Source of the DNA: Macrostomum hystrix
Taxonomy: Eukaryota > Animalia > Platyhelminthes
NCBI GenBank assembly: GCA_950097015.1
Contig: CATNEN010000038.1
Span: 4,092,001-4,156,000 of the forward strand
DNA length: 64,000 nucleotides
Reading direction: 5' to 3'
Positions 9,555 to 49,678 of this stretch are shown here, in pieces. The notes under the pieces were generated by a model. That model searched no databases. It saw only the letters and a program-made list of their open reading frames with translations, and was not told the origin of the DNA. Position numbers and translations under genes: made by a program. Within the stretch, counting starts at the first letter, position 1, and each line of letters begins with the position of its first letter.

Positions 9555-10766
9555 TTAAGCGGTCTGTAAAGTGAAGCGGCGCGGGTCGCTTGTTGACAGT
9601 TGTTTCTGTGTAGGTTCTAAACTCCTATTTCTGCTTGTCCCCAGTCCGAACAGTAGGAGTCCCGTGGCTCTTGCACGCTCTGTTAGGAGTACACACTGCG
9701 ACACTGATACTATTAACATTTTTTAGATCCTGGCTGTGCAAGGCCAAAAAGTCACCCGACTGTCACATGCTTGTTTAGATGAGTCATCAAATCAAATGAA
9801 CTATTGTTAGCCCTCCGGTGTGTGAGAGATACAATTCAGACTACTGACAACAGTAGAAAAGCAAAGACTTGGCTGCAAAACTCTCACATAACACTAAAAA
9901 TATCGCCATAAAATGGCTAGCTTAAAAGAGACTTCTGTGCACACTAAGAGTGGTGGGAGAGGACGGCGTGTGGCTATGGCTGACTGACGAAGGCAAACAA
10001 GCCAGAAACCGGTCTCGGTCTGCCAGCGCGAGGTTCGTTCCCCACTTTTAGTGTGTTACACGTTGACCCAGTAACCCCTTCTGTTAACAAACTACCATTA
10101 ATCTCTCAGCAACATTCTCTATTTCATAATTTACGTTGCGTCACCGTGTGCGCGTTTTGTCAATAGCCCAAGACACAATACCTGAAAATACTCCTTGCTG
10201 AGGTTGGGATCCGGTTTCATGGATTTGGCGCCCGGCTTCCAGTTGGCCGGGCAGACCTCGCCGTGCTTGTCGGTGAACTGGAAGGCCTGCACGAGGCGCA
10301 GGGTCTCGTCGACCGAGCGTCCAACCGGCAGGTCATTGACAGTGATCTGGCGCAGCACGCCAGAGTCGCTGATGATGAACAGGCCGCGGAAGGCCACGCC
10401 TTCATCCTCCTTCAGCACTCCGTAGGCCCGACTAATCGACTGGGACCGATCGGCCAGCAGCGGGAAGTTCAGCTGGCCGATGCCGCCCTCCTTGCGGCCA
10501 GTGTTGGACCAGGCCAGGTGCACAAAGTGACTGTCGGTGCTGCAGGCCAGCAGCTGACAGTTAATGGCCTCAAACTCAGCGGCCCGATCCGAGAAGGCGA
10601 TAATCTCGGTCGGGCAGACAAAAGTGAAATCGGCCGGATAGAAGAACAGCACAACGTATTTGCCGGCATAGTCGGCTAGTGTCACATCGGCAAAGGTCTG
10701 GTTGGGCAGTATGGCCTTGCAGGCGAAGCTGGGGGCCGGCTGGCCTGGCTGCAGCGGCTGCGACAT
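9555..10766 (-). CDS. PRDX: Typical 2-Cys peroxiredoxin (Prx1/AhpC class), ~197 aa; main exon 10766-10182 and a predicted 9-nt last coding exon at 9563-9555
   Basis: [13 protein letters not shown] (peroxidatic Cys), GEVCPANW (resolving Cys), GGIG and EYF motifs; donor TTTCAG|GTATTG. The last exon (TTTACAG|ACC GCT TAA) is less certain. Confidence 0.95.
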
Positions 10767-19293: not shown

Positions 19294-21833
19294 ATGACGG
19301 AAGGCCGCAGCGAGCGAGACTTTCAGAGGTTCATGACCGACAAGAAGGTTGAATTAGAAAAGTTTTATGACAAACTCGAGCTGTTGGCTGCACCAGAGCT
19401 GGCCAGAAGAATAGTCAGCAGCAGTGAAAAAATGCAAAACCTGATGCGCGCACTGCAAATTCTGATGAATGATCTTTATGGGGACATGGAGCAGCTGCAG
19501 CTGAGCGAGCCGCAGCTGGCGCAGCACCGTCAGCAAGTCAGCCAGCTGATGGCCAGGCGCTCAAAGCTGTTGGAAGGTCTCAGTCGCATTTGCGTCGAGA
19601 TCTACAGGCTACAGTCTGATGCGTGCTTCAGCAAGCCCGAGCTAGAAAGCGTTAACAAGCTGCAGTCGCACTCACTTTACTTTGTGACAGCAAACTTCCA
19701 CAACTTCACCGACAGTAGCCTTGAATTCTGCATCGCGCTCTCCCGCATCCAACTTCTGTTCCAGGATTTTGTTAAGCCAATGCTGGTGCTTTGGTACGAA
19801 AAACATGAGGACGTCAAAGGCTGTCTTCGAGCTGTCACAGCGTCAATCGGATTTATGTACAACATGCTTTACCGAAGCAATCCTGAGATCCACAGGGCTC
19901 TAGCGGGCTTGAATGTTGCTGTGGCGGTGATTCCTTACCTGAAAAGCTCAATCCTATCAGTACAGACTTCAGCGCTGCTGCTCATCGCATTCGCTCTCGA
20001 CGAGAGCAAGGCGAGCATGTACGGCACCGCCAGGGAGGCGATGGAGTATCTCGTGAGTTGCCTCAGAGAGTCGCTTGACTCAGACGGCAGAAGATCTCAA
20101 GGCTACCACATCTCAGAGCTGACCATCTGCCTGAACCGTTTGGCTCTCAACGACTCCAACAAGCGGCTCTTGGTGAAGCTGGAGCTGCTCCCTGTACTTC
20201 GTAGGATGTGCAGCGGCGACCGAGACGATGACATCGTCGCTGCGTTGGACATTCTGAGCACATTAAGCCGTTTGGCAGAAAATCGTCCTTCAATTGAGCA
20301 GCAGTTCTTGGACGTTCTCGCCAAACTGTTTTCCAGCTCGAAGCGGAACAGCAAAACGGGCGACTTTTTACGAAATTACCGCGCATTGCGGGTCAGTGTA
20401 GCTCGTTGTAAATTAGCATAGTAATTTAAATTTAGTTTGACGCATTTTTTATGCTTCTAATGACTGCTTCATCAATATTCATCACACGGAACAAACTAAT
20501 AAAGGACGTCGACGAGAACCTCGGCGGGCGAGTTTCACGCTGCCATGTCGAGGCCAATCATAAAGGTCCTGCACAGATGCAACACGCATTGGGTCTCGTG
20601 GATGCGCTCAAGAGGCTACAGGTTGATGTAAGACATTTTTTAACGCAAATTATATTATTTATCAAGCCATTTTGAAATTTAGGCAATGTACGGGATAAAC
20701 ATTTTGCAATTAAAAAAGTCTGCATTGGACAGCATGCACTATCTAGCACCCACTCCATGATGCTCCTGTATGAGTAAGAGACGCACCAAGCACGCAAATA
20801 TATTTTCCGAACGCATTAGGCCGCTGCTAAAGCCGTTCCAACACCGCAGATAGCATCGCAGCGACAGCCATCACCGCCACTGAAGTCACTGGCTGACGAA
20901 GCTCCTAGCTTGGACGCGAGCTTCACCTCCTGGGACTTTGTGCAGGAGAATGACAAGAAGAAGTGCATTGGAGCCGGTGGATTCGGCAAGGTGTTCGAGG
21001 CATTCACAGACCGGCACCAGTTCATTGCAGTCAAGGTCATCAAGCCGCTTCTGCAGATGACTCCGGAGGCGCAGCGGAAAATCTTTGAGCAGGAGAAGCG
21101 AGCTCTCGAGCTGCTCACCAAAGTCACACACAGAAACGTCGTTCGCTTCCTCAAAGCTGAGGAGAAGGCCGGCAAATACTTCATCTTCTGTGAGCTGCTG
21201 TCCGGCTGCACCATTGAGCAGCTGATGATGCGACAGGGAAAGCCTATCGACGAAGATGGAATTCGCAAGTTCATCGGACAGGTTGGTGGCAGTGTTTTCA
21301 ATGTGTGCTCAAATGACTAACTCATGCGAGCAGAACATCACCGAGTGTCACGACTCACTCTGCAGACGTGCTCAGCGCTGTCCCACCTGCACGGCCTCAC
21401 CAACCCGATCATCCATCGCGACATCAAGTCGTCGAATCTCATGCTCACCTACTCGGGCACAGTCAAGCTCATCGACTTCGGCTTCGCACGGGAGATCTTC
21501 ACGTCGAAGATGGTCACTCACCAGCAGTGCGGCACTCTGCACTTCATGGCTCCAGAAATCCTCACTGCCGAGGATGAGGTGGCGTACACACCAAAGACCG
21601 ACATGTGGGCGGTCGGCTGCACCGCGTTCGAGATGGCCACACGCGAGCCGCCGAATGCCGACGTGAGGCAGATCTTCCGGCTCGCTGTCCTCGTCTCGAC
21701 CAAGCCCATGCCGCAGCTGCCACAGTCAGTGAGCAGCTCGCTGCGGGACTTTTATCGGGTGTGTGTCCAGCAGGAGCCCAGAGACAGGCCGACCGCGAGC
21801 GAGTTGGCGAGACACCGCTTCCTTGCTGGCTAG
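19294..21833 (+). CDS. ARM-like repeat + Ser/Thr kinase (STE11/MAP3K-like), paralogue A, ~716 aa (exons 19294-20391, 20505-20627, 20820-21281, 21366-21833)
   Basis: All junctions are phase-0 GT-AG and in frame. Kinase motifs GAGGFGKV, AVK, HRDIKSSN, DFG, GTLHFMAPE, DMWAVGCTAFEMATREPP are intact. The helical N-terminus has LNRLALNDSNKRLLVKLELLPVL...AALDILSTLS (ARM-like). Confidence 0.85.
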
Positions 21834-23453
21834 GACGAAGTTAAAGTCTGTTGAGGTATAACTTCAACTGACCAAGCGCAGTTTGATTGTCTCCGTCAGG
21901 TTGATCGATGGTTTGATTACAAGATAAAGTGTATAAGGCGATATGAAATCGAAAGATAAGATGACATTATAATTCATCAGCATGATGTTATCCTTGGTTT
22001 CAGGCGCATTATGGATCGGAAATGTTTTTTTATTCTATTGTATTGTGTTGTTTTTTAATCCATTATTACTGAAACTTATGGAGATCGCACAAATTTGCTT
22101 TCTCAAACTATACATGTACCAATATTCGGCTGTACAAATCTTTCTTGTCCTTTATTCACGTCGGATGATTTAGGATGATGGTTAGTCGTATTGTTCATAA
22201 TTGTGTTTTAGGAGCTGTGTTATATGTACAAATATATTCTAGATTATGTGATAAGTCGATTGAAGTTTACCATGTTGATGAGTTGACTTGTGTCTCCTTA
22301 CAGAACAGAATAGAAATTATGGTGTAGTAATAGCCTGTACGAGCCTGTTCTCTCGTATGTCCTCTATTTCACCTGAAGTGAGCACCACAGGCATATACGA
22401 GTATTATCTGTGGTGAGCGCTAGAAACGTCTCTTAAGGCAATTTTCGAATCGTGTTACATAGTTGTATTCACATTTTTGTCATCTTGTCAGGAAAATGTA
22501 CGCATGGAGGTCCATGGTGGAAAATCCTTAGGCGCCAAAGCCTTTCATTGAATCGAAACACAGAGTGCATTCGATGAATTGAGATGCGGATAAAATTGTT
22601 GATCATTTTCCCTTTGCATAATCAACTAATTGTGTTTTTTTTCATTCTCACCATGGACAACTTATGTCTGCGTACGCCTAAGTGAAATCATGTAGAAAAC
22701 AAAAAAATGCGATTACAGCATAGCCTATTTTTTGTTGTTTTCTTTTGTGCAGTTCTTCGTTTGATCTGATTTTTAACTTGTAAGCAGATTTTTTACCTAA
22801 TTAATTCTTACTACACTATCGATTAATTCCTGAAAAATGGAGAGTTTTTGTTAAGTATCGTTTATTATAATATTAAAATAAACAGCTTTCATTCCCTATT
22901 CACCTTTGGTATTAATTTTTAGCTCTGATTAAATAAAATTTAGCCAAAAATGTTATGCTTTCAGTAGAGAAGCAGAAGTTTCATGTCTAGGATGGCTAGC
23001 ACAATCTGGGGAATCTGGAGAACAATCTTTTTCCCACTGGGGAAAGACCACATGACCAACTTCACGATAGCTCCCAAAACGAATGATAGATTTTAGTGAA
23101 AGTCCACCATTTCGGTCAAAATTTTCCGCCCTTCCCGCAATCAACTAATTTTCATGCCCTCCGAGTCTGCATCATGTGGATTTCATGAAGAAATTAGAGT
23201 AGAACGGAAAATTTTTGTCCGTGATTTTTTTGCGATAGGTTGAATATTTTGGAACAGGTCAAGAAAAAAGGTTTTTGAAATACCCCAGTGGTCGTTCTAC
23301 TAGCTGTAAATATCCTTGATCTGGAGAATCATTAGCTTTCAAACATACATGTTTGATTTATGTTTGATTTATGTTTGACGCAAATAAAAGTAAGACAACT
23401 CACTTATCTTTGCAGCATTATTGCGTGGACCACGAACGCACAGAAGAGCAGCG

Positions 23454-26400
23454 ATGGCGCAAGGCAAAACTGAACGTGATTTCCTTAAGTTCATGGCCGA
23501 GAAAAAGTCTGAGCTGGAAGATTTCTTTAGCACGCTCGAAGTTCTTGTAACGAAAGAGAGGGCTGGAAAAATAGTATCTGACAAAGATAAATTAATAACT
23601 TTGGGACGCTCCCTTCACGCTCTAATGAATGATCATTATGGAAACATGGAGCAGCTGCAGCTGAGCGAGCCGCAGCTGGCGCAGCATCGTCAGCAAGTCA
23701 GCCAGCTGATGGCCAGACGCCCAAAGCTGCTGGAAGGTCTCAGTCGAATATGCATCGACATATATAGGGTGCGGGCTGATGCGTGCTTTAGCAAGACCGA
23801 GCTGGAAAGCGGCAATAAGCTGCAGTCCATTATGTTGTTCTATATAACTGGAAATTTCCACAACTTCACTGACAGCAGCCTGGAATTCTGCCTTTCGCTG
23901 TCTAGAACACCATTTTTCTTCAAAGACTTTGTAAAGCCAATGCTGGGCAGTTGGTTTAACAAGCATGAGATTAACGAGGGTTGCTTCGAAGCAGTTAGCT
24001 CTTCCCTCGGCTTAACGTACAACATGCTGTTCAGGAGCAATCCCGAAATTCTAATGGTCCTTTCAGAAACTAAGGTGGTGGAGTCGGTAGTTCCGTACCT
24101 GAAAAGCTCAATCCTATCAGTACAGACTTCAGCGCTGCTGCTCATCGCATTCGCTCTCGACGAGAGCAAGGCGAGCATGTACGGCACCGCCAGGGAGGCG
24201 ATGGAGTATCTCGTGAGTTGCCTCAGAGAGTCGCTTGACTCAGACGGCAGAAGATCTCAAGGCTACCACATCTCAGAGCTGACCATCTGCCTGAACCGTT
24301 TGGCTCTCAACGACTCCAACAAGCGGCTCTTGGTGAAGCTGGAGCTGCTCCCTGTACTTCGTAGGATGTGCAGCGGCGACCGAGACGATGACATCGTTGC
24401 TGCGTTGGACATTCTGAGCACATTGAGCCGTTTGGCAGAAAATCGTCCTCCAATCGAGCAGCAGTTCTTGGACGTTCTCGCCAAACTGTTTTCCAGCTCG
24501 AAGCGGAACAGCAAAACGGGCGACCTGTTGCGAAATTACCGCTCTTTTAAGGTCAGAAAAAACCACGTTTTCTAAAATTTCCTGCTTCCATCGAGGCGAA
24601 ATTTTCAGAGCCCAACGGATATACTCGTAGTTTAGACAATGCGCAATCTAACGCTTGCATGCAGGAAAATGTGCATAATTTTATGGGAAAGCAGAAGGGA
24701 AACTTTAATTGCTTAACGCAGCTCGTCGAAAGAATATAGAATTTCTCAACAAAAGTCTCACTACATGTGTTAATCAAGGACCTCGATAAGAACCTCAGCG
24801 GGCGAGTTTCCACCGCCGGTGTCGAAACTAGTCAGGATGGGCCTGGACAGAAACAACGTGAGAAGTCTGGTCTAACAGACATGGTCACGAGACTTCGAAT
24901 TGATGTAAGACAATCGCGATTCTATTTTTGAAGCTTTGAAGACACTGAAGTTCATTGGCTAGCAATAAGTGTTGCAACGATATTAAATATTGTTGTGACG
25001 CACACCTCATCCCTGCCCTATCATTTTCTCACCTCTTTCTCGTTCCCTGCCCCGCCGGTCGGCTTGCATGCCCACCCAATTTATTTATCGATCGCCCCGG
25101 CCTACCCCTATTTGTTGTATGTACATCTCACCTGCCCTGCGTGCTCTCTTAACCCCCTGTTGTTTTGTCTCTAAAGCCCCGGAGTTCTGTGTGTGCCGAC
25201 CTAGCCATATAGCTGTGCCCAGCTAATTAGACCCCGCAAAACTCTCGTCCGTCCACCCGTTACCCTGTTTTAATATACTAGTGCGAAAAAACTCGACCGG
25301 CCACCATTGCATCAGTCGAGACACTGTGAGTCGGTTGTTTCTCTCTGTCATTCTGACGCGGGTAGAGCGGCGCTTTTCTGGGGACCTGGGGACTCGCAGC
25401 TTACCCAACCTAGCTATAGGCCTACCTGCACATGTAGGTGACTCACAACAATATTCTAACGTATCTTAATTTATATTTTCCCAGGGCGAGGATGGTTCTG
25501 CGATTCTGCGATTCCATCCCCAAACTGGAGCGAACATCCAGCTGTCACGTGATCGTCTGTGCGCCACCCGACGCAACGCAGAGTTCTGTTGTAGCGAAGC
25601 CCTGGTGTTTAGCAGTAGACCCCTGAGAGAGAATGAGACTCTCACGTGGAAGATTGAAAACAATGATTGCAACACATGGCTAGGTAGATTTAGCTTTGGA
25701 GTGACAGATGCTGACCCAGCGGGTCTGCAGCCGCTGCCAAGTACTTTTGATGAGTTAGAAAGGCTATGGGGAATTTGGTTTGAAAACACGATTATAGTTG
25801 CGTACAAAACCTGTGAAAACCTGGACATTGTCAGCTTGGGTGTAAAGTCATCGGAAACTGTTGGTGTTAGGCTATGCGGCGCCTCTAGCGAACTGCAGCT
25901 CTTCCACAATGGCAACCAGATCGACGTCGGGAAACCAGTGAAAGTGCCGCTGACGACTCCTCTGTGGGCTGTGCTCGATGTCTATGGGCCCTGCACCCAG
26001 GTGTCGATACTGCCGAACGACACGGCAGGTCAGGTGAGACCGATTTTTGTTAGCTTTTGCATTTTTTCTAATTAACATATGTGAATGCTGCACAGAAAAA
26101 CGATTGCTACAATCATGCTATTTCGAAAGGAAGTTGCAGAGAGACAATACCAACAGCGATTGCCACCAGACAATTCGCCGGCTGACGAGGCTCCTAACTT
26201 GGACGCGAGCTTCACCTCCTGGGACTTTGTGCAGGAGAATGACAAGAAGAAGTGCATTGGAGCCGGTGGATTCGGCAAGGTGTTCGAGGCATTCACAGAC
26301 CGGCACCAGTTCATTGCAGTCAAGGTCATCAAGCCGCTTCTGCAGATGACTCCGGAGGCGCAGCGGAAAATCTTTGAGCAGGAGAAGCGAGCTCTCGAGC

Positions 26401-27122
26401 TGCTCACCAAAGTCACACACAGAAACGTCGTTCGCTTCCTCAAAGCTGAGGAGAAGGCCGGCAAATACTTCATCTTCTGTGAGCTGCTGTCCGGCTGCAC
26501 CATTGAGCAGCTGATGATGCGACAGGGAAAGCCTATCGACGAAGATGGAATTCGCAAGTTCATCGGACAGGTTGGTGGCAGTGTTTTCAATGTGTGCTCA
26601 AATGACTAACTCATGCGAGCAGAACATCACCGAGTGTCACGACTCACTCTGCAGACGTGCTCAGCGCTGTCCCACCTGCACGGCCTCACCAACCCGATCA
26701 TCCATCGCGACATCAAGTCGTCGAATCTCATGCTCACCTACTCGGGCACAGTCAAGCTCATCGACTTCGGCTTCGCACGGGAGATCTTCACGTCGAAGAT
26801 GGTCACTCACCAGCAGTGCGGCACTCTGCACTTCATGGCTCCAGAAATCCTCACTGCCGAGGATGAGGTGGCGTACACACCAAAGACCGACATGTGGGCG
26901 GTCGGCTGCACCGCGTTCGAGATGGCCACACGCGAGCCGCCGAATGCCGACGTGAGGCAGATCTTCCGGCTCGCTGTCCTCGTCTCGACCAAGCCCATGC
27001 CGCAGCTGCCACAGTCAGTGAGCAGCTCGCTGCGGGACTTTTATCGGGTGTGTGTCCAGCAGGAGCCCGGAGACAGGCCGACCGCGAGCGAGTTGGCGAG
27101 ACACCGCTTCCTTGCTGGCTAG
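23454..27122 (+). CDS. ARM-like repeat + Neuralized (NHR) domain + Ser/Thr kinase, paralogue B, ~893 aa (exons 23454-24551, 24779-24904, 25485-26033, 26130-26570, 26655-27122)
   Basis: Same exon-1 length (1098 nt) and intron positions as paralogue A. The extra phase-0 exon reads LRFHPQTGANIQLSRD...LVFSSRPLRENE...W.G.FSFGVT..DP...PLWAVLDVYG, the NHR signature. The kinase is nearly identical to A. Confidence 0.85.
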
Positions 27123-29719
27123 GACGAAGTGGAAGCCATTTTGAAGCTGATGAGATAAGTTGTCACTTGTGTTAGTGCTTTCTTAGAATTATTAGTTACG
27201 GATATTTAGGCGTTTGAAGTTTATTAAATAACCAGTCTAGACCAGATGCGTGGTGGACAGAAGTACTGCGTTATCTTTGCACTATTCGATGCCATGTTTT
27301 TTGATTGCCAATTTTTTTCCAGATATCTTTGTCAGAGCCATGCTCGCATGCGAGTGCTATGAGCAGCTGTGCCAATTTTTGTGTGCACAGCCTTCAGTTG
27401 GGGTACTTTGTTTTATTCCAGCCGACAATTTTATTATTTTTTGTAACTAAAGGAATTCATCGCTACATGGCCAGTTTGACGGTTTTTAGTTGCTATCGCT
27501 TCTACCATGAGCACAGGTGCGTCCGACACTGATTGTGAACTGCAGGTTTACCGGACACACGTTACTTTTCTACGTGCAGTATTATGAAATTTATAAGACC
27601 AAATCTGATGCCTTTTTGATTATTAATTCGTGCTTCAAAAAAGCTCTTTTTGCTAAGTCTTCATTTCTCTCAAATCCTGATTTGTTTAATTGCGATTTTA
27701 TCACGAGTACTTACGAGTTTGTAGTGAAAAATTTTCCCTTCAAGTTTACATTGAAACAAACCAAAAGAAATTGATAATAAAGAAAAGCGTGGGAATAAAT
27801 TTTAGGTATATTTTAAATATTCTATCCTCCGCCAAATTGTATATCAAACAAGTGTGAAAATGTTGCTTGACGTGCGTCAATGTTGTTGAAAGCTGGACAA
27901 AAATGTAGAGCATTGCGAAATAACAAAAACGTTCGTTTGCTCATAGCTCGTAATGCCACTCACCTAATTTTAAACTAACTTTTGAAAAACAGTGATGGTA
28001 ATTAGGTTACAGTATGTAAATAAAAAAATTGCAAGACCGAATATCTTTAAGGGTACAGCGCGCACGTTTTCGTTAAAATGCTTGGAGTAACCGCTGAATA
28101 TTACAGCTTTTGTATTTCCTTGAGCAAAAATACCTTTTTAAAAAGGCTGTGGCACAGATCCTACGAGGATCCTCACTGCCAACTACGAGGATGCTCGTAG
28201 AATGACGTCATCAACCTTATGCTACTAATATTTCTTCACTCCAAGAGTAGGCTGAATTGCATATTTACGAGCGTATGAGAACAGTTTAAAGCTGACGAGT
28301 TACAAGGCCAATAGCCTAGCTCTATCGAAACGAAGCATTCATCCTTGTGCAGTACGCAAAGCATTGTGAAATCGACGACTTAGATGAAGAGAAACAAAGC
28401 GAGAACTCCAGATGTGGTGTCGAGTTTAGTTGTTGGCCCATCTGGTGTCTGGACGAAAGTGCAAACAAACTGATTGTCCATGAGCAGATTTGCACAAGGG
28501 CTTTCTTTTAAAATGGAGACATCCTGGAAATGTACGCCAGGAAGAGGTTGCGCCAAGCCCAATGCCTGCGCCCAGGCAGCTGGTTGATGGCGCTATGCAG
28601 CTGCATGCTTGCAGATGTCTGTTGCAGCTTGGATTCCAGACACAGCTTCATCGGTGTACAGTTTCAGTCTTGCTCAGCACAGTTTTATTCACATTAACCA
28701 CGGAAGTTCGAAGCACGTTCGCTGTCGAGATCGCCATCGATAAAAACAGCGCTTTTAAATCGATCTCAAGGGGCAGTGTCCCAGAGGTCTTTAGGGCTGT
28801 TTTAAGGATTCCCTGCGCTTTGAAAGAAGATTAGCAGCAGCCGAGATTACATGATCAGAAACAGCACTGACGTTGGAGGTGAAAGCCTCTTGAGTTTCAG
28901 TTTCGAGATTTCTAAGGTCCGTCCTAAGAAGGAGAGCGCTAGGCTTTTTAACTAAAAAGTAAGACTAAGATCGACCTCGCAATTGACAAGACTTTGATCC
29001 GACTTAATGCAGCTGGTCCGATGCCGGACGATATGTCCGTCAGCAGGCTGAGTTTCCGTTGAAGCCGCCACCGAAAATCATGTCTCGTGTCAGTACGTGA
29101 TCCAGGATGCTCCCAAGAATGTGAGAGTGACCATGAGGAGTAGGCCGCAGTGTGAGAGCGTAGCGTAGACACAGACGAAGCCGTCAAACAGATATCAAGA
29201 GACCCCATTCCATTCGCGTCGATGAAGTCATTTAAGTCGCTTTATTAATGAGCTCCTCTCGTCATACTCGGAACTGGCAACGCAACATTCCTTATCCAAC
29301 TTGTCAACTGACTGTTCCAATGCGAACAATTGATAAAAATCATCGAGAGAAGTGCATCAGCAGCTTTTTTTAAGTCGAAATCATCCATGTACTTCTCGAT
29401 CTAGGTGCCAGTAAGTCCGCTTCTCCATTTCCTTAACTCACCATCCATATAGCACTGTTTCGTAGGACATAGTCTATGGCAGTCTGGTAAGAATGAAACA
29501 GTCACGTAACATTTTGTTCATTCCAATGACATGAGTGTATCCTCGAATATAACCTCGTACCCTCGTATATACACTTAATACGAAAATTTTATTTTGCTAG
29601 ACAAGCAATAAAGAAACAACTAAATATTCTATTTCGGTCACGAATTTTTTTCAGTCATTCTTCGAAGGTTTCTTTGTGCTGAATTTGCGGGGCATATTTT
29701 TTTACATGGCCAAAACACT

Positions 29720-34759: not shown

Positions 34760-36165
34760 TCACAATGCACGCTTCAGAGCCTGGGCGCGAACAAAGGCCG
34801 CACCGCCGGCAGTGTCCGGGGCGCCAGCATCGGCCAGCAGGCAGTCGACGAAACGCCGAGTTCGGGCCTGGCCGCGCCGGTAGGGTGCCTGCAGGGTTAG
34901 CAGCAGCACTTCCTGCATCGGCTGCGGGCAGTAGGACTCGGCGCGGATGATATGGCCTGCCAGCTGGAGTCGCCGAAGTCGCAGCCGTTCACTTGGACGG
35001 GCCAGGTCGGCGCGGCGATAGAGTGCTGCGTTAGTGATCCGCTCGTCGCTGATCTTAAAGGCGGCGCGCAGCAGGCCAGCGTGCGCCGCATTGACTTGCT
35101 GCTCGAGCGAATCCGTCAGCGTCCAGGTCTCGGCGTTGTACAACAGGACGGTCTCGACCACCGCCTGGAACAACGCCGCCATCTGGCGATCAGGTAGGGC
35201 CTCGGACTGCAGGACCGCCCTCACAGAACGAAAGGCAGCCCAAGCGTACCGGCGGCGATGCCGCAGATCTTCGCGGACGTCTGGTACTAGACCGCCGAGG
35301 TAGACGAACTGCTGACAGCGTGGAAGCTCCGTTACCTGCCCGTCAGCGCCTCGGCTGAAAATTGCGGCCTCGATGTCGCCCGGCACGCTGAGCACAACGG
35401 TCTTCTTCGTGTTGACCAACAGGCCGACACTCGCTGCAGTGCTTACCAGCTTGTCCAGCTGGCGCTGAGCGCCCTCTACGGTAGAGGACAGCAGGGCGAG
35501 GTCATCGGCGTAGCCCAGCACGCTGAGCCGTTTCTCCGGTTGACGTCGACCCACGCGTCGCCGCAGTAGGAAGCCGTCTTCGTCGGTAGGAAGAGCAGTT
35601 CGTAGCATATGGCGCTAGTGTCCCCCCTGGAGCACCCCGGATCGGATGTCTCGAAGGAGTCCAAAAGGCCGTCCGGCGTCATCACAACTGCTCTCGTGCA
35701 CAGTACAACGCCATGATGGCGGAGATCAGCTGTTCTGGCACATGGTACGCGCGGAGCACATGTGGGAGCGCAGCCCTCGCAACCGAGTCGAATGCCTTCA
35801 TCAACAATCAGGTCCAACTGGCGCGTGCGCGCCTCCTCGATGGTTCGGCGAAGAGCTAGGATTTGCGTCACTGTGCCACGGTGGGGCCGAAACCCGTTCT
35901 GCTCAGGTCGCAGGTAGGGATCCAGCACGGGTTGCAACCGCGATAGCAGCATCCGGTTGAACAACTTCGCAACACAGGATTGCAGGCAGATGCCTCGGTG
36001 CTCGTCTAGCCGTGTAGTGCCCGGCTTCTTTGGAATGGCGATGATGTGCGCCATGGTCCACTCGGTAGGTGCCACCTCACCGGAGAGCGGTTCATCACAC
36101 GGGCGACCTCACTGGCCACACAGTGGATGCGCAGCGCCTCGATTGGCACCTCGTCCGGACCCTTT
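34760..36165 (-). mobile_element. 5'-truncated, frameshifted non-LTR retrotransposon (RTE-like) reverse transcriptase
   Basis: IPKKPG...RGICL...KLFNRMLL.RL, EQNGFR, LGYADDL, FVYLGG, VLLYNAETWT and LQLAGHIIR, split across frames. Confidence 0.9.
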
Positions 36166-45219: not shown

Positions 45220-46129
45220 GAGGATTTCAGAATTGCAGGACTCAAATCGACATGAACCAGATGCTAATAGTGAACCTTTCAGTCCCCGATCGCATAATAT
45301 TAGAGTGCAATTCGCTAGCGCACTAATTACTTGCATCTATCTATGATTATTCTCTTTCTAGATTGTTGTTTTTTCTTAGTTTTTTCGCAATTGTAATATT
45401 ACTGCCATGTGAGTAGTATCTCTGCTGCTGTTGTTGATTCGGGCATTGATTATTGTGTTATTTTATACTGACCCCGCAGACTAGCTCTTGAAAATAGAGA
45501 ATAAGTATATCTATATTCCGAAAATTACATTCTGAGTTTACTCTGTAATACATTTGTTTATGCTATTGCTAAATCCGTATTAAAAATTTATCATATTTAT
45601 TCAAGTAACTCATTTTTAACACTTGCCCGGCCCAGTTACTCTTATGCGATGATTCCATATTGAAATGATGGTTTTTAATCTAAAAAATGTCCTTAAAATG
45701 GCTCCATTCTTCAGTTATGCACACACACTGTATGGTTATCCAAGATGATTATCTAATTTTGGTGTTGTCTATTTTCTCCCTAATAGCCTACTAGGAAGTA
45801 CGAGTAGTATCATTGGAGTTTTGCACCTCATTAAATCTAGGTTTGTTCTTGAACAAGATAATTGTCGTTTTGTGATTTATTCGTCATTTTCCTCCCCTTC
45901 TGTTGTTGCGTTGGCCTACTAGCAGTAATTAATCAAGTGGCGCAAATTTATCTATTCATAGACGCATCAAATTTCGTTTCTGCCATTCGGCGCAGCAGTT
46001 AAATTTTCAGTTATAATTATTATTAAATTTAATTAGCCATTAAGAAACAAAAAAGTTTTTTAATGCTCCGAATTTCACTTTATTATTTATTTTTTGCTGT
46101 CGAATCATTTGTAAAAGCAACAAGAAATG

Positions 46130-47660
46130 TCCTCAGATGTCGCATCTTGATCTCTTATATCTCCTCAGTTGTCACATCTTGATCTCTTATATCTCCTCAG
46201 ATGTCGCATCTTGATCTCTTATGTCTCCTCAGTTGTCACATCTTGATCTCTTATATCTCCTCAGATGTCACATCTTGATCTCTTATATCTCCTCAGTTGT
46301 CACATCTTGATCTCTTATATCTCCTCAGATGTCACATCTTGATCTCTTATATCTCCTCAGTTGTCACATCTTGATCTCTTATATCTCCTCAGTTGTCACA
46401 TCTTGATCTCTTATATCTCCTCAGTTGTCACATCTTGATCTCTTATATCTCCTCAGTTGTCACATCTTGATCTCTTATATCGCCTCAGATGTCGCATCTT
46501 GATCTCTTATAAGTCCTCAGATGTCGCATCTTGATCTCGATAAGGTCCTCAGATGTCACATCTTGATCTCTTATAGGTCCTCAGATGTCGCATCTTGATC
46601 TCTTATATCTCCTCAGATGTCACATCTTGATCTCTTATATCTCCTCAGTTGTCACATCTTGATCTCTTATATCTCCTCAGTTGTCACATCTTGATCTCTT
46701 ATATCTCCTCAGTTGTCACATCTTGATCTCTTATATCTCCTCAGTTGTCACATCTTGATCTCTTATATCTCCTCAGTTGTCACATCTTGATCTCTTATAT
46801 CTCCTCAGTTGTCGCATCTTGATCTCTTATAGGTCCTCAGATGTCACATCTTGATCTCTTATAGGTCCTCAGATGTCACATCTTGATCTCTTATAGGTCC
46901 TCAGATGTCACATCTTGATCTCTTATAGGTCCTCAGATGTCACATCTTGATCTCTTATAGGTCCTCAGATGTCGCATCTTGATCTCTTATAGGTCCTCAG
47001 ATGTCACATCTTGATCTCTTATAGGTCCTCAGATGTCACATCTTGATCTCTAATAGGTCCTCAGATGTCACATCTTGATCTCTAATAGGTCCTCAGATGT
47101 CACATCTTGATCTCTTATAGGTCCTCAGATGTCACATCTTGATCTCTTATAGGTCCTCAGATGTCGCATCTTGATCTCTTATAGGTCCTCAGATGTCACA
47201 TCTTGATATCTTATAGGTCCTCAGATGTCACATCTTGATATCTTATAGGTCCTCAGATGTCACATCTTGATCTCTTATAGGTCCTCAGATGTCACATCTT
47301 GATCTCTTATAGGTCCTCAGATGTCACATCTTGATCTCTTATATCTCCTCAGATGTCGCATCTTGATCTCTTATAGGTCCTCAGATGTCACATCTTGATC
47401 TCTTATAGGTCCTCAGATGTCACATCTTGATCTCTTATATCTCCTCAGATGTCACATCTTGATCTCTTATAGGTCCTCAGATGTCACATCTTGATCTCTT
47501 ATAGGTCCTCAGATGTCACATCTTAATCTCTTATATCTCCTCAGATGTCGCATCTTGATCTCGATAAGGTCCTCAGATGTCGCATCTTGATCTCTTATAG
47601 GTCCTCAGATGTCGCATCTTGATCTCGATACGGTCCTCAGATGTCGCATCTTGATCTTTA
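46130..47660. repeat. 32-bp minisatellite, about 47 copies
   Basis: CCTCAG(A/T)TGTCACATCTTGATCTCTTATA(GGT/TCT). Confidence 0.95.
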
Positions 47661-47792
47661 TCATATCCTAAGATCTCTATCAGGTCCTAAGATTGTCTCT
47701 GGGAGTTCATACGAGAAGTTCCAGCTATCGTTGGCGTTGATGTTGGGATTTTGATATAAATATCGAAACTTCTATTGCTAGAAAGCGACAAA

Positions 47793-49678
47793 ATGCCTGA
47801 ATGGACGGGAATAACTCTGAAGTCCACTGTGCGCGAACAGTACGCTGAGAAAATTGAAAACCTGTTCGGCCCCTTCAAACTGGCCAATTGGGAGGCCGCA
47901 TTTGACGAAGCCACCTTTAACGCTTCCTTAGTCAACAGTTGCGAGCTGCGCAACTCGCCTAGCGACACGCCGCGCGGCTGGACTCTCCTACACTTCGCTG
48001 CCAGCGCCGCAGCTCCCGCCTGGGTGGCCGCTCGGCTGGTTGAATCTGGGGCGGTGCGCTGCGCCAAGGACTGGTTGGGCAGGACTCCGTTGGACCTCGC
48101 TAAAGCGAATGCCGACAGTAGCCAGGTGAAATATTGCACCATTTTATTAACAGTTAAAAGGTCATGCCATTTTTCACCTTGGGGAAAGATTTCGGGGCTA
48201 TTTTAAATGGCCATTGTCTACTTCACGAAGCTCCCAAACCGACTGGTGAAATTCAACCAATTGGATCAAAATTCAACCGAGTCGTCCGAGTCAACATCGG
48301 CGAGATATTTTTCTATTCTTGTCGAAGACCCTGTCGAAGATCCATATTGGTTAAATAGTGAAAAAATTAACAACCATTTATTCAATCTGAAATAGTCATT
48401 AACGATAGCCGACATACTTACATTAGGAAATTTTATGAGCAAAATTAATTATGCCCATATTTGTGGTTCTTTCCACCAGGTTCTGTCCGAAGAGGTTGTA
48501 GCCTTATGGTTAGAGCGTCTGACTCACTAATTCAAGGTCTTGGGTTCGATTCCCAATGTGTTCTGAGCAGTGACACATCAAGGACCACTAGAAGTAAAAG
48601 GACGGGAAACTTTGTTTCTTAGAAAATAATTGAAGGCTTGTTTCTTGCGAAAAAAATACACTTGGGAGATAGGAAATTTTCTTTTTCTTTTTTAGGTTTA
48701 AATAATCTTCGTACGGTTTTTTACTAAATAAAATCCAATTTTAACTTGAATCTTAAATTATTGATTGACCAAATTTATATTTGATGTTTTTATACATCAA
48801 TCTTATAGTTTACATTTTTGCCATCATGAATATTGTGTTTCATATTAAAATATTTATCTAGAAAAATAATTTGTTTTGAAATAAGGTATTTTATTTTACC
48901 TTATTGTTACATACAATCAATTTACTGCTTTCTAGTGATAATTATTATGGCATTAAAAATATCAGGTAATATCAAAAGAACTCCGTGTAGTGTATTTTTT
49001 CTCGGAAACCAGCCTTCAAATGTTTCTAAGAAACGTGGTTTCCCGTCCTTCTACTTCTAGTAGTCCTTGTGACACATTCGACTCGGGCAAAGTCTTTGAG
49101 CTCGAATCCATGGCGAGATCAAACTATTTTGGGGCGCAGCCGTAGACAGAAGGCTTGCAGGCCGTGAGGACCAGCTCTCTAGTCCACTGTCAACCCAGAA
49201 ACGATGAGTCAGAATCACATTATCGGAAATGAGTCGGTCTAAAAGAGAGTGCTTGATCGCCCTAATGAATCAAAGCTGTTGGCGCGCCGTTCAACAGGAG
49301 CTGGTGGCAGTCCTGACGCCGGAGTATCGCCTGGCCTCGGAGCAAATCAACGACACCCAGCTGGACGCCATTGAGGGCCACTTCCACAGCCTCATCAGAG
49401 AGGTGTCCAACGAACTGAGCGAGGACCATCAACTGGCTCTGTTGCCAGTTCGAGTCCTACTGGAGTCGTCTAAGTCGAGCCCCGACCAACAATGGAACTT
49501 TCCCATACCGGGCATGTACGGCGGCTTCTATGGGATTCATCTGGTACCCGCAGGGTCTGACGGCTCGGGCGTGTGGCACCTGCTGTGCGATAGCTGGTGC
49601 CGCGTGGTCGGCGGCTCCGGCCGGCGGGACAAAGTCACCGCTGACGGCTGCGAGCTGCTGGAATCCGGCTTCGTCTGA
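47793..49678 (+). CDS. Bacterial-type ankyrin-repeat protein with a conserved C-terminal domain, ~237 aa (exons 47793-48125, 49298-49678)
   Basis: WTLLHFAA...GA...GRTPLDLA ankyrin; phase-0 intron CAG|GT...CAG|GAG; C-terminus FPIPGMYGGF...DSWCRVVGGSG...LLESGFV. Confidence 0.8.
48495..48560 (+). mobile_element. tRNA-like SINE head (family B), intronic
   Basis: GTAGCCTTATGGTTAGAGCG (A box) ... GGTTCGATTCCC (B box); no complete cloverleaf. Confidence 0.6.
48579..49069. mobile_element. hAT-type MITE, 491 bp, ~47-bp imperfect TIRs, perfect 8-bp TSD TGACACAT
   Basis: CAAGGACCACTAGAAGTAAAAGGACGGGAAAC... versus ...GTTTCCCGTCCTTCTACTTCTAGTAGTCCTTG; TGACACAT at 48571-48578 and 49070-49077. Confidence 0.92.

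What the first reader, a model, noticed from the sequence alone, without database searches (positions are those of the whole stretch)
19294..27122. Tandem ARM-repeat / MAP3K-type kinase fusion genes: a candidate single-chain sensor-kinase system
Seen: the ARM-like and kinase ORFs, separate in the ORF track, splice in frame through phase-0 GT-AG introns into one protein in both copies (~716 and ~893 aa). The kinase keeps its catalytic motifs and STE11-like subdomains (GTLHFMAPE, DMWAVGCTAFEMATREPP). Recalled, not searched: the segment LNRLALNDSNKRLLV..LLPVL..DIVAALDILSTLS resembles the ARM region of invertebrate ARM-TIR (SARM-like) proteins. Established: C. elegans TIR-1/SARM1 signals through the MAP3K NSY-1/ASK1. 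Inference: here the TIR effector is replaced by a fused MAP3K-like kinase, giving a possible innate-immune or stress receptor-kinase. I do not recognise this as a named architecture.
Basis: partly seen in the sequence, partly recalled or inferred. Interest (0 to 1): 0.85.

Follow-up and report, generated by a model that had tools for sequence, protein, structure and literature searches.

The report
Flatworm armadillo-repeat kinase fusion genes
Two neighbouring, expressed genes of the flatworm Macrostomum hystrix each join the armadillo-repeat domain of an invertebrate ARM-TIR protein to an active STE-type protein kinase in place of the TIR domain, a natural swap of the signalling output.

Summary
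RNA contigs from three runs show every proposed GT-AG junction. Each gene gives one mRNA joining a 366-aa N-terminal domain to a C-terminal kinase. Copy 1 is 19294-21833 (716 aa, or 706 aa with the commoner acceptor at 20850). Copy 2 is 23454-27122 (893 aa), is SL trans-spliced, and carries a one-exon Neuralized (NHR) domain.

The N-terminus is a canonical ARM fold (pLDDT 92, Z about 20). Its homologues are overwhelmingly invertebrate ARM-TIR proteins. Its closest paralogue in the same genome (contig 39) is an ARM-TIR gene with the same exon-1 boundary. The kinase is catalytically intact. It nests within Macrostomum ankyrin-repeat kinases and lies nearest vertebrate MAP3K19, but STE20 kinases score equally well. 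So the genes are chimeras of two lineage-expanded families.

Specific SARM1 likeness, ASK1/MAP3K identity and an immune role are not shown.

The architecture also exists in M. lignano, filed as unnamed hypothetical proteins (PAA94232.1). I found it nowhere else and in no paper.

The two copies are old duplicates (dS saturated, dN/dS 0.15-0.27). Gene conversion has made the kinase, its intron and the distal ARM repeats identical.

It is a new variant of a known kind, of moderate interest.

The parts
19294..20391 (+). Copy 1 exon 1: start codon and the 366-aa armadillo-repeat domain of the ARM-TIR family
   Evidence: Open frame. AF2 pLDDT 92 and all-helical. VIA Z 19-20 to designed ARM, APC and beta-catenin. 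phmmer finds 188 homologues, mostly ARM-TIR. The donor at 20392 is used in RNA.
20505..20627 (+). Copy 1 exon 2: 41-aa linker that starts with the D-x-NLGGR-x-S motif shared with exon 2 of the ARM-TIR paralogue
   Evidence: Junctions 20391/20505 and 20627/20820 or 20850 appear in RNA contigs. BLASTP to L013 exon 2 matches only the first 10 residues, E 6e-4. No TIR remnant is present.
20820..21281 (+). Copy 1 exon 3: Pro/Ser-rich pre-kinase segment and kinase N-lobe. The alternative, commoner acceptor is at 20850
   Evidence: Pkinase 4.2e-11. Joints 20627>20850 (X3-X5) and 20627>20820 (X3). Homologous from the pre-kinase segment onward to the kinase exon of the ANK-kinase L014.
21366..21833 (+). 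Copy 1 exon 4: kinase C-lobe (HRD, DFG and APE motifs intact) and stop codon. It follows an 84-nt phase-0 intron (21282-21365)
   Evidence: Pkinase 1.3e-40. Joint 21281/21366 is seen in all three runs. The intron lies at the same place in L014.
23416..24551 (+). Copy 2 exon 1: spliced-leader acceptor at 23415/23416, 38-nt 5'UTR, ATG at 23454 and a 366-aa ARM domain
   Evidence: The loose 22-nt leader before 23415 in X3-X5 matches the 3' end of the published 35-nt M. lignano SL (PMC8629364). It is 77% identical to the copy 1 ARM. Weak ARM_PUB hit, 1.8e-4.
24779..24904 (+). Copy 2 exon 2: 42-aa linker
   Evidence: Joints 24551/24779 and 24904/25485 are seen in all three runs.
25485..26033 (+). 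Copy 2 exon 3: one complete Neuralized homology repeat (NHR) on a single exon between two phase-0 introns. Copy 1 lacks it
   Evidence: PF07177 8.6e-29, profile positions 1-148 of 149. Both joints are seen in all three runs. The only other NHR locus in the genome is 37% identical.
26130..26570 (+). Copy 2 exon 4: pre-kinase segment and kinase N-lobe
   Evidence: Pkinase 3.7e-11. Joint 26033/26130 is seen in all three runs. Identical to copy 1 from 26199.
26655..27122 (+). Copy 2 exon 5: kinase C-lobe and stop codon
   Evidence: Pkinase 3.1e-40. It has one difference from copy 1, at 21780/27069, Arg>Gly. Contigs run on into the copy 2 3'UTR (table 7).
20900..21841 (.). Gene-conversion tract, paired with 26189-27130: the kinase coding sequence plus its 84-nt intron, with 1 difference in about 930 nt. 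It ends 8 nt after the stop codon
   Evidence: Identity profile at offset 5289. Repeat family D1.
19954..20370 (.). Gene-conversion tract, paired with 24114-24530: distal ARM repeats (codons about 221-350), 95-100% identical. The rest of the exon is 57-93% identical by 60-nt window
   Evidence: Identity profile at offset 4160 and windowed dS/dN.

Best explanation
The window is contig 38 of the Macrostomum hystrix assembly. It holds two tandem, transcribed paralogues, each encoding a single chain. The chain has an N-terminal canonical armadillo-repeat domain of the invertebrate ARM-TIR family, a short linker exon, and a C-terminal, catalytically intact STE-group Ser/Thr kinase. Copy 2 has in addition a one-exon NHR domain.

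Shown: the genes are chimeras of two lineage-expanded families. The ARM and linker exons come from a Macrostomum ARM-TIR gene. The two kinase exons come from the Macrostomum ankyrin-repeat (MAP3K19-like) kinase family. The fusion predates the split of M. hystrix and M. lignano. The two copies are old duplicates under purifying selection. Recent gene conversion has homogenised their kinase and distal ARM repeats.

Inferred mechanism: the ARM superhelix keeps the family's nearly invariant groove residues and serves as the binding or regulatory module for a peptide or protein partner. It localises or gates the attached kinase. The output of this ARM module is therefore phosphorylation, probably entry into a MAPK-type cascade, instead of the TIR (probably NADase or oligomerisation) output of its sister genes. 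The NHR in copy 2 adds a second protein-binding module.

The physiological setting is inferred only from the ARM-TIR kinship. It would be innate-immune-like or stress signalling in a phylum that lacks Toll-like receptors.
For: Transcripts: all junctions are seen in RNA contigs, and the spliced leader sits on copy 2 (SL sequence from PMC8629364).

Species: the assembly has 220,453,370 bases in 42 contigs with N50 13,505,968. This equals the M. hystrix entry in Table 1 of PMC10468722.

ARM fold: pLDDT 92, pTM 0.90. Z 19-20 over about 290 residues to designed ARM, APC, beta-catenin and Vac8. The ARM-only profile hits Vac8 at 2e-27 and beta-catenin at 5e-16.

Family: 188 homologues were found. TIR_2 is present in 51 of 74 scanned, and about 100 of 150 by a local HMM.

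ARM tree: the ARM-kinase clade has support 100/99. It is sister to the genome's own ARM-TIR gene L013 (100/98). Both sit inside a Macrostomum ARM-TIR expansion (100/100).

Shared gene structure with L013: the same phase-0 end of exon 1, and the same opening motif in exon 2.

Other ARM loci: 7 of the other ARM-family loci in the genome have a TIR_2 hit just downstream on the same strand. There is none in this window.

Kinase tree: the ARM-kinase clade is sister to ANK-kinases P0169 and L014 (98/94). It lies within the Macrostomum ANK-kinases (100/99), which are sister to MAP3K19 (86/85). The kinase-internal intron is at the same position in L014.

Catalytic motifs, read directly from the sequence: GAGGFGKV, AVKVIK, HRDIKSSN, DFG and MAPE.

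Selection and conversion: dN/dS is 0.15-0.27 where dS is 0.4 to over 2. The kinase and its intron are identical between copies.

M. lignano has a 718-aa orthologue with the same architecture.
Against: No functional datum exists for these genes or for any ARM-TIR protein's ARM domain. Binding, gating and an immune role are all inference.

The ARM-to-kinase docking test gave no answer.

The STE subfamily is unresolved.

The intron in front of the kinase exon is phase 0 here but phase 2 in the ANK-kinase L014. The join was therefore not a simple same-phase intron recombination.

After its first 10 residues, exon 2 resembles neither parent.

No single RNA contig covers a whole mRNA, because the assemblies break where the copies are identical.
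Confidence: 0.75

Rival explanations
1. The protein is a SARM1/TIR-1-like sensor whose ARM domain senses a metabolite (NAD+/NMN-like) or a damage signal. It has short-circuited the TIR-1 to NSY-1/ASK1 step by fusing directly to an ASK1-type MAP3K, and it acts in innate immunity or stress.
For: The ARM is homologous to ARM-TIR proteins. The kinase is STE-group, with MAP3K19 as its nearest named relative and MAP3K clusters prominent in the Atlas structure search. TIR-1/SARM acts upstream of NSY-1/ASK1 in C. elegans; this is established knowledge and was not tested here. Flatworms lack TLRs but keep TIR proteins (PMC7958881).
Against: SARM1 is absent from the 60 best profile matches shown and the 50 best structural matches shown. 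The domain looks like canonical Vac8, beta-catenin or APC-type ARM. No SAM domain is present. The sister gene's TIR is TIR_2-type and shows no significant match to the SARM1 TIR. ASK1 scores below the STE20 kinases (113 against 146 bits). The kinase derives from ANK-kinases, not from an ASK orthologue.
Confidence: 0.12
2. A lineage-specific signalling kinase with no immune role. In this reading the ARM domain is just one of several interchangeable targeting domains (ANK, ARM, NHR) attached to a rapidly expanding Macrostomum kinase family. That family would be used, for example, in reproduction, stem-cell or tissue signalling.
For: The kinase family is greatly expanded: at least 19 further loci at E<=1e-30 in M. 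hystrix. It is mostly fused to ANK repeats. dN/dS of 0.15-0.27 shows ordinary purifying selection, not diversifying selection. ARM domains of this family are also joined to NHR, Mind-bomb repeats and other domains in other phyla.
Against: The ARM module is otherwise almost always coupled to TIR, a domain tied to immunity or cell death. No expression or phenotype data point either way.
Confidence: 0.3
3. Annotation or assembly artefact: the ARM and kinase ORFs are separate genes, or one copy is a pseudogene.
For: No single RNA contig spans a whole mRNA. One X4 contig keeps intron 1 of copy 1, which would end the frame after the ARM domain.
Against: Spliced contigs join the ARM exon tail to the linker and to the kinase exon in both copies in three runs. 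All frames are open. Selection is purifying. An orthologue of the same architecture exists in M. lignano.
Confidence: 0.02

Closest known systems
Invertebrate ARM-TIR proteins, a class of TIR-domain-containing proteins of unknown function (listed for example in Aplysia, PMC9334734)
   Same: The ARM domain is homologous: phmmer E down to 6e-53 within Macrostomum, and 1e-12 to 1e-7 to mollusc, brachiopod, nemertean, echinoderm, annelid and coral proteins. The domain is N-terminal in both. The exon-1 boundary and the exon-2 opening motif match those of the genome's own ARM-TIR paralogue.
   Different: The TIR domain, and the SAM-like tail seen in the paralogue, are absent. An STE kinase takes their place. 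No TIR remnant is detectable.
SARM1 / C. elegans TIR-1
   Same: An N-terminal ARM domain is followed by an effector domain in one chain. Its pathway feeds a MAP3K (established knowledge).
   Different: There are no SAM domains and no TIR. The ARM domain is not detectably closer to SARM1 than to generic ARM proteins. The kinase does not derive from ASK1.
Macrostomum ankyrin-repeat kinases (M. lignano P0168-P0173; M. hystrix contig 7 locus L014) and vertebrate MAP3K19 (YSK4)
   Same: The kinase domain is 45-66% identical to the ANK-kinases and about 35% identical to MAP3K19. The kinase has the same two-exon structure and the same internal intron position. The pre-kinase segment is homologous.
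   Different: The N-terminal repeat domain is ARM of the ARM-TIR type instead of ANK. The intron in front of the kinase exon has a different phase (0 against 2).
NHR-ARM proteins of the hemichordate Ptychodera flava (named 'neuralized-like protein 4', P0079 and P0104)
   Same: An NHR domain and an ARM domain of the same family sit in one chain, as in copy 2.
   Different: The NHR lies N-terminal to the ARM, and there is no kinase.
Other ARM-plus-kinase proteins: LRRK2-type ROCO kinases (from general knowledge) and the stramenopile MLKL_N-kinase-ARM protein P0069
   Same: ARM repeats and a protein kinase occur in one polypeptide.
   Different: The kinase group, domain order and companion domains differ (Roc-COR, MLKL_N). 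These are independent inventions.

Membership tests
Armadillo-repeat superfamily | Right-handed superhelix of three-helix ARM repeats | tested here: met
   AF2 model pLDDT 92. VIA Z 19-20, 270-300 residues aligned to designed ARM, APC, beta-catenin, Vac8 and importin-alpha. Foldseek probability 1.00.
Armadillo-repeat superfamily | Sequence similarity to ARM repeats | tested here: met
   The single exons miss Pfam thresholds. The family profile A2 hits Vac8 at 2e-27 and beta-catenin at 5e-16. Of 74 homologues, 27 carry Pfam Arm and 31 carry ARM_ARMC5.
Invertebrate ARM-TIR proteins | ARM domain of this family | tested here: met
   phmmer. The tree nests the window's ARM domains inside the ARM-TIR clade with support 100/98 and 100/100.
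Invertebrate ARM-TIR proteins | C-terminal TIR domain | tested here: not met
   No TIR in any exon. No TIR_2 hit in the window in the whole-genome scan. No remnant in exon 2. The genes are derivatives of the family, not members.
SARM1 / TIR-1 | ARM followed by two SAM domains and a TIR | tested here: not met
   Pfam finds neither SAM nor TIR.
SARM1 / TIR-1 | ARM domain specifically related to the SARM1 ARM | tested here: not met
   SARM1 is not among the 60 best profile matches shown or the 50 best structural matches shown. Lower ranks were not displayed, so a distant relation is not excluded.
Active eukaryotic protein kinase (Pkinase) | Gly-rich loop, VAIK Lys, HRD, DFG and APE motifs | tested here: met
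   Pfam 1.3e-40 and 4e-11 on the two exons. The motifs were read in the translations. The full-length orthologue P0002 scores 6.6e-57 over profile positions 3-263 of 263.
STE11 / MAP3K family | Kinase domain groups with STE11 members rather than STE20 or others | tested here: inconclusive
   It is sister to MAP3K19 at 86/85 in a tree that lacks MST, PAK, ASK and MEKK references. Bit scores: MAP3K19 142-150, MST4/STK24 141-146, MAP3K2 114, ASK1 113. The Atlas structure search lists mostly MAP3K clusters.
STE11 / MAP3K family | Phosphorylates a MAP2K | not testable with these tools
   This needs a biochemical assay.
Neuralized homology repeat (copy 2 only) | Full-length match to PF07177 above the curated cut-off | tested here: met
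   100.8 bits against a cut-off of 23.3, profile positions 1-148 of 149.
Macrostomum ANK-repeat kinases | Kinase domain within the clade | tested here: met
   Clade support 100/99, and sister to P0169 and L014 at 98/94.
Macrostomum ANK-repeat kinases | N-terminal ankyrin repeats | tested here: not met
   No ANK hit in any exon of either copy.

The most novel reading that the evidence does not exclude
The ARM domain of the widespread but uncharacterised ARM-TIR family would be a portable sensor module. In Macrostomum it would have been rewired from a TIR (NADase or oligomerisation) output to a MAPK-cascade kinase output. That would give a single-chain cytosolic sensor-kinase for innate immunity or stress in a phylum without Toll-like receptors. 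The two copies would keep different sensing surfaces (the diverged ARM N-terminal two thirds, with or without NHR) while gene conversion holds one common effector, much as in paired immune receptors.
Probability: 0.2. Interest if true: 0.8.

Novelty: new variant of a known kind. Interest (0 to 1): 0.52.

Why it matters
ARM-TIR proteins are numerous in molluscs, annelids, echinoderms, cnidarians and flatworms, yet nobody knows what their ARM domain senses or binds. Here nature has attached the same ARM module to a kinase, whose activity and substrates are far easier to assay than TIR signalling.

The genus is also tractable. Its model species M. lignano has an orthologue, and in situ hybridisation and gene knock-down are in use in flatworm work (titles listed). 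That makes the function of the ARM module directly testable.

The locus is also a clean, transcript-verified case of several processes together: exon-level domain shuffling (ARM exons, kinase exons and a plug-in NHR exon), and gene conversion confined to the effector part of a tandem pair.

The SARM1 and ASK1 analogy is not borne out. The proteins already sit in databases as hypothetical proteins. Lineage-specific domain shuffling in such families is common in invertebrates (for example amphioxus, PMC2575513).

Tried and rejected
- Complex prediction of ARM (residues 1-366) with kinase (450-718) of the orthologue P0002 gave no answer, score 0.00. It is evidence neither way.
- I looked for a TIR remnant in exon 2 or in the linker of P0002 and P0152. 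hmmsearch with all filters off gave only negative scores. BLASTP supports only the first 10 residues of exon 2.
- SARM1 likeness was tested by sequence profile and by structure. SARM1 was not among the matches shown. The sister gene's TIR against the PDB gave only an insignificant match to a bacterial Cat1 TIR.
- The search for homologous proteins with the ARM exon alone found one fragment, because of its length and word limits. The exhaustive phmmer search was needed.
- The Atlas feature search on the kinase returned generic kinases (TSSK, ULK3 and others) and did not help classification.
I could therefore not check M. lignano synteny: whether it has a tandem pair, or an NHR-bearing copy.
- The first ARM tree, with 154 rows, did not finish. 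I rebuilt it with 46 rows. The rows left out are lower-scoring ARM-TIR homologues from other phyla.
- A literature search for the M. lignano gene identifiers found nothing. A search for ARM with TIR, kinase domain and domain shuffling found no description of this architecture.
- The spliced proteins were never joined. Every search used single exons by reference, and the public M. lignano protein P0002 stood in for the full-length chain.

Full report
**What is there.** The region holds two head-to-tail genes on the + strand. Copy 1 has four coding exons: 19294-20391, 20505-20627, 20820 (or 20850)-21281 and 21366-21833. Copy 2 has five: 23454-24551, 24779-24904, 25485-26033, 26130-26570 and 26655-27122. 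All introns are GT-AG and phase 0. Pfam finds a protein kinase split over the last two exons of each copy. It finds a complete Neuralized homology repeat on exon 3 of copy 2. On the first exons it finds only a sub-threshold ARM hit. The catalytic motifs are all present in the translations (Gly-rich loop, AVKVIK, HRDIKSSN, DFG, MAPE). I never built or searched a joined protein. Where a full-length chain was needed I used the public M. lignano protein P0002.

**Transcripts.** Runs X3-X5 behave as RNA. Their contigs skip exactly the predicted introns and carry a spliced leader. In each run one 830-nt contig links the copy 2 exon 1 tail, exon 2, the NHR exon and the first 100 nt of the kinase exon.

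For copy 1 the commoner acceptor of exon 3 is 20850 (three runs). Both are in frame, giving 706 and 716 aa. One X4 contig keeps intron 1 while splicing intron 2, which would end the frame after the ARM domain.

The contigs break at 20909/26198, where the two copies become identical. So no contig spans a whole mRNA, but the pieces overlap by 30 nt inside a single open exon.

The 22 loose letters in front of 23415, with the next base, equal the last 23 nt of the 35-nt spliced leader published for M. lignano (PMC8629364). Copy 2 is therefore SL trans-spliced 38 nt before its ATG.

**Organism.** The assembly has 220,453,370 bases in 42 contigs, with one contig of 13,505,968 bases. These figures equal the M. 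hystrix entry (total length, contig number, N50) in Table 1 of PMC10468722.

**The N-terminal domain.** An AlphaFold2 model built on 74 homologues is very confident (pLDDT 92, pTM 0.90) and all-helical. It aligns over about 270-300 residues at Z 19-20 with designed armadillo proteins, APC, beta-catenin, Vac8 and importin-alpha. A profile of TIR-less family members hits Vac8 (2e-27) and beta-catenin (5e-16). The fold question is settled: it is a canonical ARM domain. SARM1 appears in neither displayed list.

**Family of the ARM domain.** An exhaustive phmmer search of 1.84 billion representatives gave 188 hits. About 100 of the best 150 have a TIR domain C-terminal to the ARM match (local HMM). 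Pfam finds TIR_2 in 51 of the 74 proteins scanned. Named examples come from M. lignano, gastropods, a bivalve, a brachiopod, a nemertean, a starfish, annelids and corals. This is the 'ARM-TIR' class listed in invertebrate immunome surveys, and its function is unknown (PMC9334734).

Only one cluster has ARM followed by a kinase: M. lignano P0002 and P0152 (718 aa, filed as 'hypothetical protein'), which are 71% identical to copy 1 in the ARM part. A stramenopile protein has the reverse order with other domains.

**Origin of the ARM part.** M. hystrix has three full-length copies of this ARM exon. Two are in the window. The third is on contig 39, 49% identical. The contig-39 gene continues into a TIR_2 domain. 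Its first exon ends at the same codon with a phase-0 GT. Its second exon opens with the same D-x-NLGGR-x-S motif.

In a maximum-likelihood tree the ARM-kinase sequences of both species form one clade (100/99). That clade is sister to the contig-39 ARM-TIR gene (100/98). Both sit inside a Macrostomum ARM-TIR expansion (100/100). Seven other ARM-family loci in the genome have a TIR_2 match just downstream on the same strand. The window has none.

**Origin of the kinase part.** The closest kinases are Macrostomum proteins with long ankyrin-repeat N-termini (M. lignano P0168-P0173, 44-61% identity) and a contig-7 locus in M. hystrix (L014, 66% in the C-lobe). L014 shares the pre-kinase segment and has the kinase-internal intron at the same place.

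In the kinase tree the ARM-kinase clade is sister to P0169 and L014 (98/94). It lies within the ANK-kinases (100/99), which in turn are sister to vertebrate MAP3K19 (86/85). That tree lacks MST, PAK, ASK and MEKK references. Against solved structures the STE20 kinases MST4 and STK24 score 141-146 bits, MAP3K2 scores 114 and ASK1 scores 113. MAP3K19 proteins score 142-150 bits. The kinase is safely STE-group, but 'MAP3K' is not established.

The intron in front of the kinase exon is phase 2 in L014 and phase 0 here. After its first ten residues, exon 2 resembles neither parent, and no TIR remnant is detectable. The exact breakpoint is therefore blurred.

**The two copies.** The kinase coding sequence, its 84-nt intron and 8 nt past the stop codon are identical apart from one base (21780). 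ARM codons about 221-350 are also identical. The rest of the ARM exon is 57-93% identical by 60-nt window, with dS from 0.4 to saturation and dN/dS of 0.15-0.27.

In the unconverted segments copy 1 is closer to the M. lignano protein than to copy 2: 56, 69 and 70% against 49, 61 and 59% identity. The duplication is therefore probably older than the species split. The grouping of the two copies together in the ARM tree is then an effect of gene conversion. This last step is inference.

The NHR exon encodes exactly one domain between phase-0 introns. Its only relative in the genome is 37% identical. No NHR-bearing kinase appeared among the M. lignano hits.

**Mechanism.** The following are shown:
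- Both genes encode one chain with ARM followed by kinase.
- The kinase has intact catalytic motifs.
- The ARM domain keeps the residues that are nearly invariant across the ARM-TIR family: N190, E275, N289, K290 and L324.
- Both copies are under purifying selection.

The following is inferred. The ARM superhelix is the binding or regulatory module, and the kinase has replaced TIR as its output. A docking prediction gave no answer. An immune or stress role rests only on the kinship with TIR proteins, in a phylum reported to lack Toll-like receptors (PMC7958881).

**Verdict.** It is not supported for SARM1 likeness or ASK1-type identity, and it is untested for function. I found no paper describing the architecture, but predicted proteins are already public. 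It is a new variant of a known kind, of moderate interest.

Noticed in passing
window 23416-23560: The spliced leader ends in ATG, and here that ATG is out of frame with the main start at 23454. By my reading of the sequence it opens an upstream ORF of roughly 45 codons that overlaps the real start codon and could damp translation of copy 2.
   Followed up: partly
window 20335-20938 (run X4, record 10): One RNA contig keeps intron 1 of copy 1 (20392-20504) yet splices 20627 to 20850. The frame would then stop at 20419-20421. The result would be an ARM-only product of 375 aa or a decay target.
   Followed up: no
window 21812-22816: RNA contigs cover about 1 kb downstream of the copy 1 stop codon. 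Coverage then drops to nothing until the copy 2 leader acceptor. This is either a long 3'UTR of copy 1 or a separate transcript.
   Followed up: no
window 25126-25447: A 322-nt RNA contig (X5 only, low depth) lies inside the 580-nt intron in front of the NHR exon. It may be a retained intron piece or an intronic transcript.
   Followed up: no
window 10131-10766 (-): An intact single-ORF peroxiredoxin of 211 aa: AhpC-TSA 8e-39 plus the 1-Cys Prx C-terminal domain.
   Followed up: partly
window 34760-36075 (-): Two overlapping ORFs with weak reverse-transcriptase matches (RVT_1, about 1e-6). This is probably a decayed retroelement.
   Followed up: no
window 46001-48000: Strong strand asymmetry in one 2-kb bin: GC skew -0.24 and AT skew -0.24. 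I did not look at the cause.
   Followed up: no
G000 contig 38, 17955229-17995979 (outside the window): A tandem array of at least five nearly identical genes with two TIR_2 matches each, spaced about 7-13 kb apart. This is a separate TIR expansion in the same genome.
   Followed up: no
L013 6127-6400 (-), contig 39: The sister ARM-TIR gene ends in a tail after the TIR domain that looks like a SAM-type helix bundle by eye. Several family members have weak SAM hits. Pfam did not call it in L013.
   Followed up: partly
L014 555-2866, contig 7: Long coding-looking tandem repeats (7-residue and roughly 20-residue units) lie next to a GPCR-like ORF, a few kb from the ANK-kinase gene and on its downstream side.
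   Followed up: no
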